Source: Podarcis tiliguerta
Lineage: Eukaryota
DNA: 64,000 nucleotides
Strand: one strand, 5' to 3'
Assembly: GCA_965153285.1 (NCBI GenBank)
Contig: OZ229112.1
In this document: positions 4,792-56,170 of the stretch, piece after piece
Layout of the letters: each line of letters begins with the position of its first letter
How positions within the stretch are numbered: the stretch's first letter is position 1
The notes under the pieces: model-generated
Databases searched by the model: none
What the model saw: the letters and a program-made list of their open reading frames with translations, nothing else
Told to the model about the DNA's origin: nothing
Position numbers and translations under genes: made by a program

Positions 4792-6486
4792 TATCACTGA
4801 GCAGGATCTTGCCAAAGCAAAGCAGTTTCATTTCCCATTGAAATGTTGAAATGATCAGGACTGAGAAATGTTTTAGGTGACCCTTGTTTGATGTTGGGTA
4901 TTTATTTAGATACAGGACATTGCAGCCACACTAAACATACACCTCTCCCTCCTCTCTTCTGACTAAATGGCAGGTGCAAGTCTTATGTGTGTTTGGAATA
5001 GATGAGCATTTCCTCATCAAAGTGTGTATGCCCACCCACTCCTCCTATACAGATACTGCAGGTATTTGGGGGGCATCTGCATTAATTGGCGTTTCCACAG
5101 TATACTTCCATCCCACATGTGCCAATATCGATTCAGATTTCATATTAGATCTTATGAACAGAAACTGTTGCAATTTTGAGGGCGTTTCCCTGCTAATCAA
5201 AATGATGGCTGGAAAGGGAAAATCAGCAGCAATTCCATTTCTCACTATTAGTGATTAAAATAAGTTGAAGCAGCAGCAATCTGGTTTTATTGCATGGCAG
5301 CCTGCCATGGTATAGGATTAAAATAGTGTATTGATTTAAACCCATCCACTTTACAGTTCCATATCAGAATCCTCTAAATAAAGAAGAAACAGGCACCTTT
5401 CCCTAGGAAATGCACACTGCATATGAGATCAGTGGGAGAGCAGCTGAAACAAGAAATTATTTAATACCAGCAACTGTCTGGCTGGATGGAGCATGCAGTC
5501 TTCAGTGTATTCCCACTGCAGGTATTCTGACTTTCCCATGTTGTCTCTGCTCTGCAGAAAGCCGTATCACCTGCTAGAAATGTCCTTCAGCAGTTTACAA
5601 CAGGACAGTCCCTGTTTAAGAGAACGAAAGGAGCCACGCTGGACATTAAAAATGTCCCACCAGCGGGGAACATTTCAGTAACTCATGACATGGAGGCACT
5701 CTTACCCTGACCTTACAATTGATATGCTGAAAAGTTTGCTGTGCTGAAAAATTATGCTCCCCCCCCCCTTTAACCACTTTCTATCAACAAATGAGGGAAA
5801 GAAAATTTCAACGGAATTCTCAAAGGTGGGGTGCAGCTGTTTTGTTGTGCAGACTGTGCTTTTTAGATGGCCAAGGGATGTTTGCGAGTGCAAATAATCT
5901 CTTTGGTAGTCTGCAGCCTTCCTGGGTCCCCACTCTTCCTGAAAACCCCCTGGCTTCCTCTGCCGTGCTTTCCTGTACACATGGGAAGGTGGAGAAGATT
6001 CCTACTGCATGCCTGACAGCTGTTCATGGGCAGGGGTGTTTTTATGAGAAGCCCATTTGCTTTTAAATAAATCATTGTGGAATGATTGTTTTTAAAGGTA
6101 AAAGAAACAAACAAAATAAGCAAGTGCACCAATCTAAGGTGTTTAGTAGCCAGGCAGCCATGCCTCCTGTACTTCAATTAAAGCTCATGGGGAGATGTTC
6201 TGAGGTAAAGTCTCCTATGCCTTATTTTTCTACAGTAAATATAGGCAGGTGTGAAACTGGAGAGTGTTTGAGAAGTGTATAATGGAAAGAAGAAACACAT
6301 GCAATCCCCCACCCCCCAAAAAAGCATGTTTACTTCTCATAAAATAGGTAATTTTAAAGAAATTCTAAAGTGCCCAGACAGAAAAATAGGAGTGGGTTTT
6401 TTTTGGAGGGGAAGAGAAATTTTTAGAAACTGGAGTTCAGGTCTCACTCAACAGAGCATTAACACAAGCTAACTCAAACAGATATA

Positions 6487-8264
6487 CCGTATTTTTCGCC
6501 CCATAGGACGCTCCGGCCCATAGGACGCACCATGTTTTTTGGGGGGGAAATAAAGAAAAAAAATTTTATTTCCCCCTCAGGCGCTTGTGGGGCCAGGAGC
6601 GGGGAGAAGCGCTCTTCTCCCCACCGCCTGCATGCAGAACAGGTCCGGGGACAGCGGGGAGACGCGCCGCGCCTCCCAGCTGTCCCCGGAGCTTGCGGGC
6701 AGGCAGCGGGGAGAAGCGCTCTTCTCCCCGCCGCCAGCCTTCACGTCAGGTCCGGGGACAGGGGGAAGACGCGCCGCGCCTCCCCCCTGTCCCCGGAGCT
6801 TGCGGGGCAGGCAGCGGGGAGAAGCGCTCTTCTCCCCGCTGCCAGCCTTCACGTCAGGTCCGGGGACAGGGGGAAGACGCGCCGCGCCTCCCCCCTGTCC
6901 CCGGAGCTTGCGGGCAGGCAGCGGGGAGAAGCGCTCTTCTCCCCACCGCCTGCATGCAGAACAGGTCCGGAGACAGCGGGGAGACGCGCCGCGCCTCCCA
7001 GCTGTCCCCGGAGCTTGCGGGCAGGCAGCGGGGAGAAGCGCTCTTCTCCCCGCCGCCTGCATGCAGAACAGGTCCGGAGACAGCGGGGAGACGCGCCGCG
7101 CCTCCCAGCTGTCCCCGGAGCTTGCAGGCAGGCAGCGGGGAGAAGCGCTCTTCTCCCCACCGCCTGCATGCAGAACAGGTCCGGGGACAGCGGGGAGACG
7201 CGCCGCGCCTCCCAGCTGTCCCCGGAGCTTGCAGGCAGGCAGCGGGGAGAAGCGCTCTTCTCCCCACCGCCTGCATGCAGAACAGGTCCGGGGACAGCGG
7301 GGAGACGCGCCGCGCCTCCCAGCTGTCCCCGGAGCTTGCAGGCAGGCAGCGGGGAGAAGCGCTCTTCTCCCCACCGCCTGCATGCAGAACAGGTCCGGGG
7401 ACAGCGGGGAGACGCGCCGCGCCTCCCAGCTGTCCCCGGAGCTTGCAGGCAGGCAGCGGGGAGAAGCGCTCTTCTCCCCACCGCCTGCATGCAGAACAGG
7501 TCCGGGGACAGCGGGGAGACGCGCCGCGCCTCCCAGCTGTCCCCGGAGCTTGCAGGCAGGCAGCGGGGAGAAGCGCTCTTCTCCCCACCGCCTGCATGCA
7601 GAACAGGTCCGGGGACAGCGGGGAGACGCGCCGCGCCTCCCAGCTGTCCCCGGAGCTTGCAGGCAGGCAGCGGGGAGAAGCGCTCTTCTCCCCACCGCCT
7701 GCATGCAGAACAGGTCCGGGGACAGCGGGGAGACGCGCCGCGCCTCCCAGCTGTCCCCGGAGCTTGCAGGCAGGCAGCGGGGAGAAGCGCTCTTCTCCCC
7801 ACCGCCTGCATGCAGAACAGGTCCGGGGACAGGGGGAAGACGCGCCGCGCCTCCCCCCTGTCCCCGGAGCTTGCGGGCAGGCAGCGGGGAGAAGCGCTCT
7901 TCTCCCCGCCGCCAGCCTTCACGTCAGGTCCGGGGACAGGGGGAAGACGCGCCGCGCCTCCTCGCTGTCCCCGGAGCTCGCGGGGCTGGCGGCGGGGAGA
8001 AGCACGCATCTCCCCGCCGTCAGCCTCTAAACCACATAGGGAGACAGCGGGATGGCGGCGTTCCGCCTCCCTGCTGTCCCCCGACCTTGTGGGGCTGGCG
8101 CTGCGGCTCTCCTGAAGCCTGGAGAGCGAGAGGGGTTGGTGCGCACCGACCCCTCTTGCTCTCCAGGCTTCAGCGAAAGCCTGCATTCGCCCCATAAGAC
8201 GCACACACATTTCCCCTTCATTTTTGGAGGGGAAAAAGTGCGTCTTATAGGGCGAAAAATACGG
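6487..8264. mobile_element. Non-autonomous Tc1/Mariner-superfamily (Tc2-like, CCGTA ends) DNA transposon carrying an internal minisatellite
   Basis: 25-bp TIRs ccgtatttttcgccccataggacgc / gcgtcttatagggcgaaaaatacgg, flanked by TA on both sides. The subterminal motif cata(a/g)gacgc repeats at ~6502, ~6519 and ~8193. Confidence 0.9.
6596..8030. repeat. GC-rich minisatellite, 107-bp unit, ~14 copies (13 intact + 1 degenerate)
   Basis: Example unit 7231-7337: gcaggcaggcagcggggagaagcgctcttctccccaccgcctgcatgcagaacaggtccggggacagcggggagacgcgccgcgcctcccagctgtccccggagctt. Confidence 0.97.
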
Positions 8265-8544
8265 TAAGTAATGGCAGTAATTCTTTCCTTTTTTGTTAAT
8301 TTTTAAATTATTAATTGGCAGTAATTCAAGACAACTGGTTCTCCTAGTACATGTTTCAGAGGATGGCTAAATTAAGAACACAACAACCACAACTACAACA
8401 CCACCACATTGAGTTGAGGCCATACTCGTGTGAGGTTGTTTCTCACTCCTCCTTTCTAGCAATAGCAGCCCCATGTTCTGAAGCTCAGAAACCTTCTGGA
8501 ACAGAACCCCACAAAGCAGCAGATTCATTAGAAGCACCTTCTAG

Positions 8545-22318: not shown

Positions 22319-22508
22319 NNNNNNNNNNNNNNNNNNNNNNNNNNNNNNNNNNNNNNNNNNNNNNNNNNNNNNNNNNNNNNNNNNNNNNNNNNNNNNNNNN
22401 NNNNNNNNNNNNNNNNNNNNNNNNNNNNNNNNNNNNNNNNNNNNNNNNNNNNNNNNNNNNNNNNNNNNNNNNNNNNNNNNNNNNNNNNNNNNNNNNNNNN
22501 NNNNNNNN
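22319..22508. other. Assembly gap (190 N), intronic
   Basis: Run of N. Confidence 0.99.
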
Positions 22509-48102: not shown

Positions 48103-48205
48103 CTTATTATGTGTCTGCGTTTGTCCAACCAGTATAAGAATATTTGATGAGATAATAGACAGGCAGAAATTAATTAGAATTATTGACCTCTCAGATCTGA
48201 TGTAT
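48103..48205 (-). CDS. ADGRB3: ADGRB3 internal coding exon: ICL1 + TM2 ([35 protein letters not shown])
   Basis: Acceptor tctttggacag|ATACATCAGA and donor CATAATAAG|gtatga; 103 nt. Its phase-2 start completes the AG|A Arg codon of the previous exon. Too short for the ORF track, so I translated it by hand. Confidence 0.97.
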
Positions 48206-52482: not shown

Positions 52483-52586
52483 CTCCATAGTGCTGCATAG
52501 ACAACTGCTAGGGTGATCAAAGCCAAGCATGAAAGGCCACTGCCTACTATAAGGGTTACTGAGGGAGCACCAGATGATTCCATGAT
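52483..52586 (-). CDS. ADGRB3: ADGRB3 (BAI3) internal coding exon: end of stalk + TM1 ([35 protein letters not shown])
   Basis: Minus-strand acceptor ...ccacag|ATCATGGAATCA and donor CTATGGAG|gtatgt; 104 nt, phase 0 in and phase 2 out. The translation matches ADGRB3 TM1 as I recall it (human [35 protein letters not shown]) and differs clearly from the ADGRB1/2 paralogs. Confidence 0.97.
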
Positions 52587-54185
52587 CTGTGGGTCATAAC
52601 AAACATCTATCAGATAAAACCATGTTCCAGTAACTAAAGCACAAAACCAAAACAGGAGAGATGGATAGCTGATGTAGTGATTAGCCACATCATCTAAATA
52701 GCATTGCCAACAAGTAACCACCTCTCTCTACTTCAGCCTCTGTCCTAGTTCCTAAAGTATCCGAGGCCTGGGTATTTACAGAATACCAAGACAGTAACCC
52801 CACTGGTCTTTGATGATATCCTCAGCAGTCTATTGCATCTCATGAAAATAAATACATAGAATTTTTTTAAAAGAGAGAATAGGGAAAGCCAACAGTCTGA
52901 TGGGCACCCATAACATTAATTGACATTAAAAAGCTCTCTAGGTTTTGCTTTGATGGGAAAAAACTACACAAGTAAAAATGGTTTTCCTCCTTGAAAGGCA
53001 GATGTATTTGGATAGCAATGTTCTAAACAAATTGTGTGATTTATTCTGACAAATGTAATGCCAACTAATTTCTTATCCAAAATACAAGATCAAACTTTCT
53101 AACTCTACAGTAACTTTGCCTTAAAGCCAGCATTCATTTTCTTTCTGTCTCTTAGCAGCTAAGAGAGTACCAATTTAAGAAAAAAAAGAGAACAAAACGT
53201 ATGCATCATTTGTAAGATCTGGACCTCTGAAACAATAGCACTTCTAATGTTTAATATTTATAGGAGCTGAAGTATAAATGACCTTGAGGCAGAAAAACCA
53301 TTTTTTTTGAGCTATGAAATTACCTCCAACACCCCACCTTTGCCCCACACACAAGCATTTACACTGGTTTTGTTGGTTTTGTTTTGTTTCAAAATGTACA
53401 CATTCAATACAATTAGACCAGGAAGTTTGCAGTGATCTGCTGCTTGATTTAGCAGTGTGCTGCTGAAAAGCCTCAAGGCTCCAGTATAAATTGCATTTTA
53501 TCAAGATACAATTTGTAACCGAGGTGAGGCAAACTGTATATCTTATCCAGGTTTTTAAGTTTATTTCTGCCAAATACTTCTAGTTTACTGCTGAGAAGAA
53601 CCTTGGCCACACACTGAAAATCTTTTCCCCTTAAAGCTTCAAGGTGCTTGCTCTTTAAAACAAAAAACACCAACCAACCTATTTTATAGGCATTAATACT
53701 GTTGAGTTCCTATTTCTCAATCTTCATCATTGTATTCATACTAGAGGGTCTATTTTACAAGATATCAACAGACAGCATAGATTCCTTGTAATGCCCAATG
53801 CAGAACTGCAATCTGTTTAACTAGTGTAGCTAGGTTCCTGCTTCTACCAGCAACAATAAAAAAACCTTGTATATTCTTTTTTCCCTTCTTTTTTTTTAAA
53901 AAAAGAAAACCCAGGACTGTAATACATTACATTACAGTTGCTAAGTTTTCTCTAAGAAAACAGGAGTACCTCAGCACTTGAAACTGACTGGCATTTAGTT
54001 ATAAGGCAAAACCAGCAATTCGTTCCCAAAAACTAAGAACTGCTAATAGATAAGAGAAAAGCCAGTCTTTTCCAGACCTGCAACGCTGATACAATTTCTC
54101 ATCTGAGTTAATGCTGGACACATAAAAAAACACACCAAAAACCCTCCCAGTCATTGCATTAAACTCAGGGCTTTTTTCTTCTTCT

Positions 54186-54325
54186 NNNNNNNNNNNNNNN
54201 NNNNNNNNNNNNNNNNNNNNNNNNNNNNNNNNNNNNNNNNNNNNNNNNNNNNNNNNNNNNNNNNNNNNNNNNNNNNNNNNNNNNNNNNNNNNNNNNNNNN
54301 NNNNNNNNNNNNNNNNNNNNNNNNN
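54186..54325. other. Assembly gap (140 N) overlapping the ADGRB3 GPS exon
   Basis: Run of N. Confidence 0.99.
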
Positions 54326-54335
54326 AGAGTCGTTC
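54326..54335 (-). CDS. ADGRB3: ADGRB3 GPS/Stachel exon, 5' 10 nt only (G AAC GAC TCT = N-D-S); remainder falls in the assembly gap 54186-54325
   Basis: Long polypyrimidine tract ending ttcttgcag|GAACGACTCT. The phase-2 reading N-D-S corresponds to the N-E-S-L-G-T-W-S-T-Q-G-C start of the mammalian GPS exon, which directly precedes the IMESSG exon. The position ~1.7 kb upstream of the TM1 exon fits. Confidence 0.8.
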
Positions 54336-54449
54336 CTGCAAGAAGAGAGAGGGAGGGAGACAGAGAAAGAGGGAGGGAGAGAGAAAGAGAGAGAGAAAGA
54401 AAATCGGGATAATTACGGCTGACGGTCAATTCCTTGAAGAGAAAATGCA

Positions 54450-56170
54450 GTTTAATTGAGAGCAGAGTCTAGTGTGGTTCCCGGACAGAAGAGATCTACT
54501 TGTTGTTGAATAGGACTTAATTTAGATGCATCTCCAGCTGTACAGTAATGCGGGGAGGGGGGCGAGAGAGGCGGCGAGGGAGGGGGACAGAAGGCAAGCA
54601 GGCAGCTCGGCGGCGCGCAGTGAGCTGTCCAGAGCTCTTGGTGCTGAAAGGGCTCTGTAAGAGCTCTCTCGGCTCGCCGTAGAAGCGGAAGCCTTCCCCG
54701 CTGCCCGCCGCTTTCCCAACTGCTCAGATCACTGCGAAAACTCATAGCGGGGGGAAATAAAACAAAAGACCCTTGTGGTTCCCCCACCCCCATCTTTCAT
54801 ACCAGCTCTGCCACGTTTTTGTGAAGCTATTACCTCGCTCTTCCGTGCGTGCGTGCGTGTGTGTGTGTAATTTAAATGCAGATGGCTCTGTAATATCTGT
54901 CTGATTAACACTGGTTAGATTGGCCAATTCTGGGTCTTCTTTTTTTCTGGCTAGGATTTCGTAGGTGGTGAAGCTATTTTGTTCTCCTTGTGGGTTTTAA
55001 AGCTCAGCCTTGCGGATTTCACCCTGGAAACGGGCGGCAGCGGCTGATTCCTTCTCCAACTCTTCCCTTTTTCGCCTGAGCTCCAGCGCAGGGGTGGATT
55101 TCAGCAGGGCAGCGCATCGTTCAAGAGACACCAGTTCGCCCTCCAGACATCCCTCCGTCCAACTCGCCCTCCTTCCCTCCCTCCTTTTCCTTTCCATGGT
55201 GCTGGTGGGTGTGTGGCGGAGGAGGGGGGGGGGACACGGGACACACAAGCGCGAAGAGATCGTTTGCTGGGGCTTTATCCACTACCACCCTGTTATTAAA
55301 GGGGGGGGGGAGCCTCAAGAAAAAAGAAAGAAAACGCCACCCTTGATTTGATTAGCAATTTAAAAAGTACAAAAGCTTCTTCTCTAATCCTCCCCGGTAG
55401 AACAATAAAATGGTATCAACCCGCGTTTTCCTTGTGCGGAGAAAAAGAGCAAGGCGGGAGTAGGGGTGGGTGGTGGGTGGGAAGAGAGAATCGCCTTGTT
55501 TTTCCATGTGAATCAAAGGGGTTACGGGGTCTCTCCTCAAGGAGAACTGCTCGGCTTCTTCGGACTCAAACCAGTTTTCACGCATTTAGTGTTTTGCGAA
55601 TTGGAACAGGCGGGTGTCGTTTCCTTCCCCCTCACATGCCTTCGCACAAGCTCTCTCGCCCCCTCCCCCCGGTTTCCAGAACCAGGCTTCGTATGCAGGG
55701 ATTCATGTATTGCCTAAGCTATCTGTGCACGGATGCCAGGAAGTCTCCTGCCAGCAACAGCGAGTGCTGTCAATTCCATCCCCAAGGCACTTAAAAACAA
55801 GGGGGAGGAGGAGGTGGCGAGAGAAAGAGAGGGAGGAGAAGAGCGCTTTCACCTTCAAATTCCTCCTCCTCTCAACTCCCTTTGAACCAGCCCTCCTGCT
55901 CTGGCTTTCCCACGTCTGTTCGCGGCGATGACTGCGAGCGCGGACTCTGGAGCCCCGGCCATTTGTGCTTCGAAGCGCGCGCCTTCCTATCCCACCAGGC
56001 GCCACTTGCCTTCCACACCCCGCGAGCTCAATGGTTGGCACTACAAATGGCTTCGGAGCAGAGTCATAAACAAAGCAAAAGACGGGGGCGGGGGTGAAGA
56101 GAGTCCCCCAAACTGCGCTATTCAGGATCTCCCTGTCCAGGCCAGCTGTAGCCTTCAAACTCACAAACGC
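54450..56170. promoter_or_regulatory. Intragenic CpG island / candidate internal promoter in the intron upstream of the GPS exon
   Basis: Non-repetitive GC- and CpG-rich stretch (e.g. cggcggcgcgcag, cgcggcgatgactgcgagcgcgg, gcgcgcgcc) in an otherwise CpG-depleted AT-rich gene. It has a GC box (ggggcgggg ~56085), a palindromic double CCAAT ATTGGCCAAT (~54919-54928), and GA-rich tracts. Confidence 0.75.

What the first reader, a model, noticed from the sequence alone, without database searches (positions are those of the whole stretch)
52483..56170. Candidate internal CpG-island promoter producing an ectodomain-less, Stachel-less ADGRB3 receptor
Seen: a unique-sequence CpG island starts ~100 bp upstream (gene orientation) of the GPS-exon acceptor, deep inside the gene. 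On the sense (minus) strand it has a plausible donor GAG|GTAATA (exon end 54834; alternative CTG|GTATGA at 54803), ~500 nt from the acceptor at 54335. The frame that would join the GPS exon has stops and no ATG, so this first exon would be non-coding. The first visible in-frame Met downstream is the second codon of the TM1 exon, ATCATGG, with optimal Kozak context (A-3, G+4). Known: adhesion GPCR signalling depends on the N-terminal fragment and the Stachel just after the GPS cleavage site, and an intron-17 alternative promoter giving shorter isoforms has been described for the paralog ADGRB1. Inference: a reptile ADGRB3 transcript starting here would encode MESSGAPSV...7TM + C-tail, lacking the C1QL-binding ectodomain, the GAIN domain and the tethered agonist. 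It could be a ligand-independent scaffold or a dominant-negative isoform, and the mechanism could be amniote-wide.
Basis: partly seen in the sequence, partly recalled or inferred. Interest (0 to 1): 0.8.

Follow-up and report, generated by a model that had tools for sequence, protein, structure and literature searches.

The report
Known internal ADGRB3 promoter, reptile copy
A CpG-rich stretch just upstream of the GPS exon of this reptile's ADGRB3 gene sits where mouse Adgrb3 and the paralog ADGRB1 have a described internal promoter for receptors lacking the ectodomain, so it is most likely the ortholog of a known feature, though I could not obtain RNA evidence for this species.

Summary
Window 54336-56150 (minus strand) is a unique-sequence CpG island: 1815 nt, GC 0.54, CpG o/e 0.65, against 0.10-0.17 in the flanks. 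It abuts a strong acceptor at 54335.

The gene is ADGRB3. The TM1 exon (52483-52586) carries ATCATGG. An unmasked TM2 exon (48103-48205) is 34/34 identical to bird, mammal, snake and turtle B3.

Its two donors (54834, 54803) are no better than chance.

- Mouse RNA-seq (Knierim 2019, supplementary table) shows Adgrb3 first exons starting 658-929 nt upstream of the 127-nt GPS exon. These make up about 56% of islet transcripts.
- ADGRB1 has the same validated promoter, with an ATG in the next exon (Parag 2024).
- 71 database protein models of ADGRB1/2/3, shark to mammal, start at this exact Met. They include a snake B3 model beginning [10 protein letters not shown].

Verdict: probable reptile ortholog of a known internal promoter. 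Interest is low to moderate.

The parts
54336..56150 (-). CpG island; candidate internal (pre-GPS-exon) promoter and 5' leader of CTF-only ADGRB3 transcripts
   Evidence: 85 CpG in 1815 nt, GC 0.536, o/e 0.65 against 0.10-0.17 in the flanks. No TE signature. The position is homologous to mouse Adgrb3 first exons starting 658-929 nt upstream of the GPS-exon acceptor.
54403..54531 (-). Non-coding block conserved between mammal (red deer) and this reptile, 68-196 nt upstream of the acceptor
   Evidence: The first 40 residues of deer gene model OWK01478.1 (P0002) are translated from the DNA just upstream of its GPS exon. They match the window in three blocks: 9/11, 7/7 and 8/12 codons. The block contains GT sites at exon ends 54417 and 54424, near where mouse first exons end (94-108 nt from the acceptor).
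54625..54647 (-). RE1/NRSE-like motif TCAGCACC-N9-GGACAG (non-canonical half-site spacing)
   Evidence: One match in the window against 0.01 expected from shuffles. Its identity as a REST site rests on my memory of the consensus and was not tested.
54326..54335 (-). Visible first 10 nt of the GPS exon (G AAC GAC TCT), with the acceptor AG at 54337-54336
   Evidence: The codons R-N-D-S equal deer model residues 41-44.
54186..54325 (.). N run (masked or gap). By homology it holds the remaining ~117 nt of a 127-nt GPS exon plus its donor. Not filled.
   Evidence: Mouse exon 26 is 127 nt. The deer homolog is 1 nt + 42 codons.
52483..52586 (-). TM1 exon (104 nt). The predicted initiator ATG is at 52583-52581 in the context ATCATGG.
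   Evidence: The Met is present in all 12 spliced or full-length BAI homologs checked, and 71 database protein models start there.
48103..48205 (-). TM2 exon (103 nt; R|YIRSERS...HNK)
   Evidence: Pfam 7tm_2 E=7.9e-6, above the gathering score. 34/34 identical to ADGRB3 of birds, mammals, snake and turtle, 30/34 to B1, at most 27/34 to B2.
54803..54834 (-).
   Evidence: They are present but score only 5.9-6.0 bits, a quality found about 2 per kb on this strand.
22319..22508 (-). Second N run, preceded by a polypyrimidine tract; probably the masked TM3 exon
   Evidence: The next exon in mouse is 151 nt (exon 21).

Best explanation
The island is the reptile ortholog of the internal promoter that the ADGRB family carries at the 3' end of the long intron preceding the GPS exon.

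Proposed mechanism:
1. Transcription starts inside the island. By analogy with mouse, this is roughly 0.65-0.95 kb upstream of the acceptor, at about 54.99-55.27 kb.
2. The transcript either runs straight into the GPS exon as a 5'-extended first exon, or is spliced from a short first exon to the acceptor at 54335.
3. It then uses the normal TM1, TM2 and later exons.
4. The in-frame leader has stops and no ATG, and the GPS exon of relatives holds no Met. Translation of the receptor frame would therefore begin at the conserved Met at codon 2 of the TM1 exon (52583).
5. The product would be MESSGAPSV... + 7TM + C-tail, about 620-655 aa, with about 5 extracellular residues and no signal peptide, GAIN domain or tethered agonist.

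Shown here: the island, the exons, the frames, the gene identity, the conservation of the Met and of a non-coding block, and the existence of the same product as database models in other species.

Inferred: that this island fires in this species, where the TSS lies, which splice form is used, and what the protein does.
For: 1. The island is real and unique sequence.

2. The gene is ADGRB3, and the exon sizes and spacing match mouse. TM1/TM2 are 104/103 nt in both species. The GPS-TM1 intron is about 1.62 kb against 1.60 kb. The TM1-TM2 intron is 4.28 kb against 4.86 kb.

3. Mouse Adgrb3 (Knierim 2019, PMC6667449, supplementary file 4):
- Exons 27-29 are the GPS exon extended 658-929 nt 5'.
- Exons 30-34 are first exons that start at the same places and end 94-392 nt upstream of the acceptor.
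- Variants built on them sum to about 0.56 of islet transcripts.
- The next canonical exon lies 168 kb upstream.
- The text says promoters separate the CTF from the NTF for Bai3.

4. ADGRB1. [quoted passage not shown] New first exons splice to exon 18 or extend it, and the ATG is in exon 19. The 70-kDa product MEKAT... was confirmed by RT-PCR, immunoblot and a luciferase assay (PMC11711277).

5. Short Bai3 isoforms from an alternative promoter persist in exon-10 frameshift mice (PMC13197933; PMC13062082). A ~73-kDa brain band is lost in the exon 2+18 knockout (PMC10301052).

6. 71 protein models of B1, B2 and B3 start exactly at this Met. They include snake XP_015675233.1 (653 aa, [10 protein letters not shown]), turtle A0A8C8RXZ2, kakapo A0A672TJZ3, wood mouse XP_052049326.1 and shark XP_067840141.1.

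7. The deer and fish B3 homologs of the GPS exon contain no Met.

8. A non-coding block next to the acceptor is conserved between deer and this reptile.

9. A neuron-type RE1-like motif lies in the island.
Against: The island is only moderate (GC 0.54). It has no TATA box, no forward GC box, and only two CCGCCC and two CCAAT.

The leader would carry upstream ATGs if the TSS lies above them. These are 55197 (ACCATGG, 66-aa uORF), 55150, 55117, 54800, 54793, 54745 and 54531. They would lower initiation at 52583.

Many of the database models that start at the Met may be artefacts of fragmented assemblies or split gene models. The snake model sits on a 333-kb scaffold, and the deer model is ab initio.

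A conserved element next to an exon can also be a splicing or enhancer element.
Confidence: 0.68

Rival explanations
1. The island is an orphan CpG island or conserved non-coding element with a role other than transcript initiation. It could be an intronic enhancer or silencer (for example REST- or Polycomb-bound) of full-length ADGRB3, or a splicing-regulatory region for the acceptor after a very long intron.
For: The conserved block lies directly beside the acceptor. An RE1-like motif is present. There are no classical core-promoter motifs. No RNA holder is on record.
Against: In mouse, assembled transcripts begin at the homologous place and make up over half of islet Adgrb3 RNA. The paralog's homologous region has promoter marks and reporter activity. 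Models starting at the TM1 Met exist in many vertebrates. An enhancer role and a promoter role do not exclude each other.
Confidence: 0.2
2. The island drives another transcript, such as an antisense or bidirectional non-coding RNA on the + strand, rather than a sense ADGRB3 isoform.
For: CpG islands often fire in both directions. A 164-codon stop-free stretch lies on the + strand at 55300-55791.
Against: That stretch is GC-rich, where stop-free runs are expected by chance. No Rfam family reached significance (best E 0.74). Nothing in the literature I read points to an antisense gene here. The mouse transcripts are sense.
Confidence: 0.06
3. The CpG richness has no function. It would be a by-product of GC-rich low-complexity sequence, or of a mis-join at the N run that placed foreign sequence next to the exon.
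For: Purine/pyrimidine runs make up part of the island. The N run prevents proof of continuity.
Against: CpG o/e is 4-6 times that of the flanks over 1.8 kb. The acceptor, the R-N-D-S codons and the conserved upstream block lie on the island side of the N run and match the deer model in the same order. The island is therefore at the right place. Intron sizes match mouse.
Confidence: 0.06

Closest known systems
Mouse Adgrb3 (Bai3) internal promoter giving CTF-only transcripts (Knierim et al. 2019, Sci Rep, PMC6667449; short Bai3 isoforms in Shiu et al. 2023 as cited in PMC13197933 and PMC13062082)
   Same: It is the same gene, and the exon triplet matches (127/104/103 nt). First exons start within about 1 kb upstream of the GPS-exon acceptor, after a very long intron. 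The product is a CTF with a domain-less N terminus.
   Different: The mouse evidence is RNA-seq and western blots, whereas here there is only sequence. I could not check whether the mouse region is a CpG island.
ADGRB1/BAI1 alternative promoter in intron 17 (Parag et al. 2024/2025, Mol Neurobiol, PMC11711277)
   Same: The architecture is paralogous. The promoter straddles the boundary between the intron and the GPS exon. First exons are non-coding or 5'-extended. The ATG is in the next (TM1) exon at the homologous Met (MEKAT... against MESSG...). The product has about 5 extracellular residues and no signal peptide or Stachel.
   Different: It is a different paralog. BAI1 also has a variant with an in-frame ATG in the new first exon, giving a 60-aa N terminus. 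In this window the in-frame leader has no ATG.
Annotated short ADGRB3 protein models: snake XP_015675233.1, turtle A0A8C8RXZ2, kakapo A0A672TJZ3, wood mouse XP_052049326.1, shark XP_067840141.1
   Same: They start at the same Met, with the TM2 exon at residue 35. They carry only the 7tm_2 domain and are 619-653 aa long. The snake and turtle models begin [10 protein letters not shown], identical to the window.
   Different: These are database gene models whose transcript support I could not inspect. Some may be fragments caused by assembly breaks.
Internal promoters separating CTF from NTF in other adhesion GPCRs (Adgrd1/Gpr133, Gpr97, Emr1, Emr4, Lphn2; Knierim 2019)
   Same: The principle is the same: the 7TM half is transcribed as its own unit. 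CTF-only mRNAs were seen for 67% of the genes studied.
   Different: These are other genes with other start positions. For example, the ADGRD1-6 ORF starts inside the Stachel.

Membership tests
CpG island | Gardiner-Garden/Frommer criteria: at least 200 nt, GC at least 0.5, CpG o/e at least 0.6 | tested here: met
   54336-56150 is 1815 nt with GC 0.536 and o/e 0.65. Flanks have o/e 0.10-0.17.
CpG island | Takai-Jones criteria: at least 500 nt, GC at least 0.55, o/e at least 0.65 | tested here: not met
   The whole island has GC 0.536. The best 700-nt piece, 55451-56150, has GC 0.564 and o/e 0.646, just under the threshold.
ADGRB3 (BAI3) gene | Exons encode a class B2 7TM domain that is closest to B3 among the three paralogs | tested here: met
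   The TM2 exon hits Pfam 7tm_2 at E=7.9e-6, 25.7 bits against a 20.6 cut-off. It is 34/34 identical to B3 of birds, mammals, snake and turtle, 30/34 to B1 and at most 27/34 to B2. The TM1 exon begins [10 protein letters not shown], as in snake and turtle B3.
ADGRB3 (BAI3) gene | Exon sizes and order as in the ortholog | tested here: met
   TM1 is 104 nt and TM2 103 nt, as mouse exons 25 and 24. The GPS-TM1 and TM1-TM2 introns are 1.62 and 4.28 kb, against 1.60 and 4.86 kb in mouse. The GPS exon itself is masked.
ADGRB internal promoter upstream of the GPS exon | Location at the 3' end of the long intron that precedes the GPS exon, reaching the exon boundary | tested here: met
   The island spans 1-1815 nt upstream of the acceptor at 54335. 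Mouse Adgrb3 first exons start 658-929 nt upstream. The ADGRB1 promoter straddles intron 17/exon 18.
ADGRB internal promoter upstream of the GPS exon | Transcripts with 5' ends in the region, joined to the GPS, TM1 and later exons | not testable with these tools
No holder is on record as RNA.
ADGRB internal promoter upstream of the GPS exon | Active-promoter chromatin (H3K4me3, H3K27ac, ATAC), an unmethylated state, or reporter activity | not testable with these tools
   There are no epigenomic data or wet assays here. The CpG retention (o/e 0.65) only implies low germline methylation.
ADGRB internal promoter upstream of the GPS exon | No usable in-frame ATG before the TM1 exon, and a conserved Met at codon 2 of the TM1 exon used as the start | tested here: met
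   The in-frame leader is closed and has no Met. The deer and fish B3 homologs of the GPS exon have 0 Met. The Met is present in 12 of 12 homologs, and 71 models start there. The masked exon of this genome itself was not read.
RE1/NRSE (REST binding site) | Left half-site TCAGCACC and right half-site GGACAG at canonical (2 nt) or known non-canonical spacing; REST occupancy | tested here: inconclusive
   Both half-sites are present with a 9-nt spacer, with 0.01 expected per window. The allowed spacings are recalled from memory, and occupancy is not testable.

The most novel reading that the evidence does not exclude
The pre-GPS-exon promoter and the initiator Met at codon 2 of the TM1 exon may be an ancestral feature of the whole ADGRB family. 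In that case they predate the B1/B2/B3 split and have been kept in jawed vertebrates from sharks to mammals. The 7TM and C-tail half would then be a separately transcribed gene within the gene, here marked by a CpG island, an amniote-conserved non-coding block and an RE1-like site. This would support the idea that adhesion GPCRs arose by fusing an adhesion gene to a GPCR gene that kept its own promoter.
Probability: 0.45. Interest if true: 0.45.

Novelty: new member of a known kind. Interest (0 to 1): 0.27.

Why it matters
If the island fires, this reptile makes a BAI3 receptor without the C1QL- and RTN4R-binding ectodomain, the GAIN domain and the tethered agonist, as mouse apparently does.

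This matters mainly for practical work. Knockouts or antibodies aimed at 5' exons would miss the short isoform. CTF-sized bands need not come from GPS cleavage, since BAI3 is not detectably cleaved in HEK293 cells (PMC13062082).

Conservation from reptile to mammal, and across the three paralogs, would argue that the short form is functional and not transcriptional noise. Its role remains open. An ectodomain-deleted BAI3 that keeps the agonist is hyperactive but fails to rescue neuronal phenotypes (PMC13322242). A BAI1 construct lacking the whole N terminus still traffics and signals, as cited in PMC11711277.

As a discovery it adds little, because the promoter is described in mouse Adgrb3 and human and mouse ADGRB1, and the product is already a database model in a snake.

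Tried and rejected
No read evidence was obtained.

4. P0002 first looked like a spliced RNA contig with an unspliced leader. It turned out to be an ab initio deer gene model, so I use it only for sequence conservation and exon length, not as transcript evidence.

5. P0090, named ADGRB3 by its source, behaves as a B2 ortholog. I therefore repeated the search with the kakapo B3 model.

6. Transposon-cargo reading, suggested by other notes on this genome: rejected, because there are no TIRs or repeats.

7. Known RNA families: nothing significant in Rfam.

8. Core-promoter motif counts were uninformative.

9. A paper search for the peptide MESSG with BAI3 found nothing. Shiu et al. 2023 (PMC10730119) is not held.

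10. I searched exon by exon, by reference.

11. I did not fill the N runs. One search printed the first residues of bird and frog models that begin at the GPS exon. I do not reproduce them, and I use only the three residues the window itself shows (N-D-S).
Full report
What is in the sequence

On the minus strand, a ~70-nt polypyrimidine tract ends in ...cttcttgcag|GAACGACTCT, with the first exon base at 54335. The sequence then becomes N from 54325 down to 54186.

About 1.6 kb further 3' lies a 104-nt exon, 52586-52483. It reads ATC ATG GAA TCA TCT GGT GCT CCC TCA GTA... and ends GGAG|gtatgt. The ATG at 52583-52581 has A at -3 and G at +4.

A second N run at 22319-22508 follows a polypyrimidine tract and is probably the next exon, masked.

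The island

Window 54336-56150 holds 85 CpG in 1815 nt, with GC 0.536 and o/e 0.65. The 1.6-6 kb stretches on either side have o/e 0.10-0.17, and the whole window has 0.27.

It is a real but moderate island. It passes the Gardiner-Garden/Frommer criteria and falls just short of Takai-Jones.

It is not a repeat and not transposon cargo. Only purine/pyrimidine low-complexity runs and (TG)n were found, with no terminal inverted repeats. Rfam gives nothing significant.

By the numbers, the strongest "island" of the window is elsewhere. It is a 107-nt x 13 GC-rich minisatellite at 6594-8019.

Gene identity

The TM2 exon hits Pfam 7tm_2 above the gathering score (E=7.9e-6). An exhaustive phmmer search with that exon, followed by name look-ups, gives ADGRB proteins. 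Identity is 34/34 to ADGRB3 of birds, mammals, a snake and a turtle, 30/34 to ADGRB1 and at most 27/34 to ADGRB2. The allowed part of the TM1 exon begins [10 protein letters not shown], identical to the snake and turtle B3 models.

Exon sizes and spacing match the mouse Adgrb3 exon table of Knierim et al. 2019:

| Feature | Mouse | This window |
|---|---|---|
| GPS exon | 127 nt | masked |
| TM1 exon | 104 nt | 104 nt |
| TM2 exon | 103 nt | 103 nt |
| GPS-TM1 intron | 1.60 kb | about 1.62 kb |
| TM1-TM2 intron | 4.86 kb | 4.28 kb |

The gene is ADGRB3.

The gap

I did not fill the N run. By length alone, the homologous exon is 127 nt in mouse and 1 nt + 42 codons in a red-deer gene model. Ten nt are visible. 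The remaining 117 nt and the donor fit inside the 140 N.

The visible codons across the acceptor, R-N-D-S, equal residues 41-44 of the deer model. An exon of 1 + 3x42 nt ends in phase 0, as the TM1 exon (which starts ATC ATG) requires.

The conserved upstream block, the acceptor and the N-D-S codons all lie on the island side of the N run, in the same order as in deer. The island therefore belongs here. The two sides are compatible with one continuous in-frame exon, provided the N length is true.

Both donors exist. With an approximate 5' splice-site matrix they score 5.9 and 6.0 bits. They rank 6th and 7th of 92 GT sites in the stretch, and sites of that quality occur about 2 per kb on this strand. 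The genuine TM1 and TM2 donors score 8.6 and 7.9. They carry no weight.

The frame statements are right. For either donor, and for an unspliced extension, the frame that joins the GPS exon is closed by stops and has no Met.

The leader contains ATGs in other frames: 55197 in ACCATGG context with a 66-codon uORF, then 55150, 55117, 54800, 54793, 54745 and 54531. Depending on the TSS, these would dampen initiation at 52583.

What the literature already says

Knierim et al. [quoted passage not shown] Their supplementary exon table gives the anatomy:
- Exons 27-29 are the GPS exon extended 658, 859 and 929 nt upstream.
- Exons 30-34 are first exons starting at the same three places and ending 94, 108 or 392 nt upstream of the GPS acceptor.
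- Variants built on these exons (variants 1, 2, 6, 7 and 10) sum to about 0.56 of Adgrb3 transcripts in islets.
- The next canonical exon is 168 kb upstream.

[quoted passage not shown] PMC13062082 makes the same point about a CTF-sized band. A ~73-kDa brain band disappears in the exon 2+18 knockout (PMC10301052).

For the paralog, Parag et al. (PMC11711277) show the following:
- Iso-Seq transcripts have new first exons that splice to exon 18 or extend it.
- Translation uses a start codon in exon 19, giving a 642-644-aa protein that begins MEKAT with about 5 extracellular residues.
- RT-PCR, immunoblots and a luciferase assay confirm this.

Database models

Among the proteins returned by two word-index searches and the exhaustive search, 71 start exactly at this Met, with the TM2 exon at residue 35. 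They cover B1, B2 and B3, from sharks and a chimaera through teleosts, frogs, turtles, a snake and birds to mammals.

For B3 they include:
- snake XP_015675233.1 (653 aa, [10 protein letters not shown])
- turtle A0A8C8RXZ2 (626 aa)
- kakapo A0A672TJZ3 (619 aa)
- wood mouse XP_052049326.1 (619 aa)
- shark XP_067840141.1 (639 aa)

Two 639-aa products were called on 2.5-2.7-kb Logan contigs.

The Met is present in all 12 spliced or full-length homologs I checked. The deer and fish B3 homologs of the GPS exon contain no Met.

These are gene models, and some surely reflect assembly breaks. I therefore treat them as support, not proof.

Conservation next to the exon

The deer model OWK01478.1 is an ab initio prediction whose first 40 residues are simply the translated DNA upstream of its GPS exon. 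Those residues match window 54531-54403 in three blocks, at 9/11, 7/7 and 8/12 codons, separated by indels.

A non-coding element 68-196 nt upstream of the acceptor is therefore conserved between a mammal and this reptile. It overlaps the place where the mouse first exons end, and it contains GT sites at exon ends 54417 and 54424.

Inside the island there is also TCAGCACC-N9-GGACAG at 54625-54647, with 0.01 expected per window. This resembles an RE1/NRSE with non-canonical half-site spacing. The consensus is recalled from memory and was not tested.

What I could not do

The decisive test was RNA reads. The look-up of sequencing runs listed no holder on record as RNA. It did list 2026 raw RNA runs of a sister species that holds 67% of the island's 31-mers as DNA.

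Small runs (39-340 million letters) of seven organisms hold 5-30% of the island's words. That pattern fits target capture of a conserved locus, or RNA, and I could not tell which.

Mechanism and rivals

Most likely (0.68), the island is the reptile ortholog of the ADGRB pre-GPS-exon promoter.
- Transcripts would begin roughly 0.65-0.95 kb upstream of 54335.
- They would enter the GPS exon directly or through a short intron.
- They would be translated from 52583 into an ectodomain-less, GAIN-less, Stachel-less receptor of about 620-655 aa.

The rivals are:
- a conserved orphan island acting as an enhancer, silencer or splicing element without a TSS (0.2)
- a promoter for another or an antisense transcript (0.06)
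- no function, or a mis-join (0.06)

What the short protein does is open. BAI3 is not detectably autocleaved in HEK293 cells (RLS in place of HLS, PMC13062082). An ectodomain-deleted BAI3 that keeps the agonist is hyperactive yet cannot rescue neuronal phenotypes (PMC13322242). A BAI1 construct lacking the whole N terminus still reaches the membrane and signals, as cited in PMC11711277.

Verdict

The feature is not new. It is described for mouse Adgrb3 and for ADGRB1, and the predicted product is already a database model in a snake and a turtle.

What this window adds is that the homologous spot in a reptile is a CpG island with an amniote-conserved block. Together with the family-wide conserved Met, this suggests an old, retained promoter. 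Interest is 0.27.

Noticed in passing
window 6594-8019: A GC-rich minisatellite: a 107-nt unit x 13.3 copies with 95% matches. By the numbers it is the strongest 'CpG island' of the window (6451-8300, GC 0.68, o/e 0.78). It lies in an ADGRB3 intron 3' of the probable TM3 exon.
   Followed up: partly
window 54625-54647 (-): TCAGCACC-N9-GGACAG, an RE1/NRSE-like motif with non-canonical half-site spacing, sits inside the island about 290 nt upstream of the GPS-exon acceptor. There is one match in the window against 0.01 expected.
   Followed up: partly
window 54403-54531 (-): This non-coding block is conserved with red deer, as seen through the deer ab initio model OWK01478.1, which translates its own upstream DNA. 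It has three blocks (9/11, 7/7 and 8/12 codons) and contains a CRE-like TGACCGTCA and a TAATTA.
   Followed up: partly
window 54336-56170: Small sequencing runs (39-340 million letters) of seven coded organisms hold 5-30% of the island's 31-mers. This is far more than low-coverage shotgun data could hold. It suggests target capture of a conserved locus, or transcription.
   Followed up: no
window 22319-22508: The second N run is preceded on the minus strand by a polypyrimidine tract. It is probably the masked TM3 exon (151 nt in mouse). It lies 25.6 kb 3' of the TM2 exon, against 90 kb in mouse.
   Followed up: partly
window 48103-48205 (-): This is an unmasked TM2 exon of ADGRB3 that is not mentioned in the finding. 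It is 100% identical at protein level to birds, mammals, a snake and a turtle.
   Followed up: yes
proteins P0090, P0118-P0175: The Dissostichus protein named ADGRB3 by its source (KAK1880070.1) clusters with ADGRB2 orthologs, so the name is probably wrong. Many teleost ADGRB2 isoforms also start at the TM1-exon Met (MGPSSMPSVP...).
   Followed up: partly
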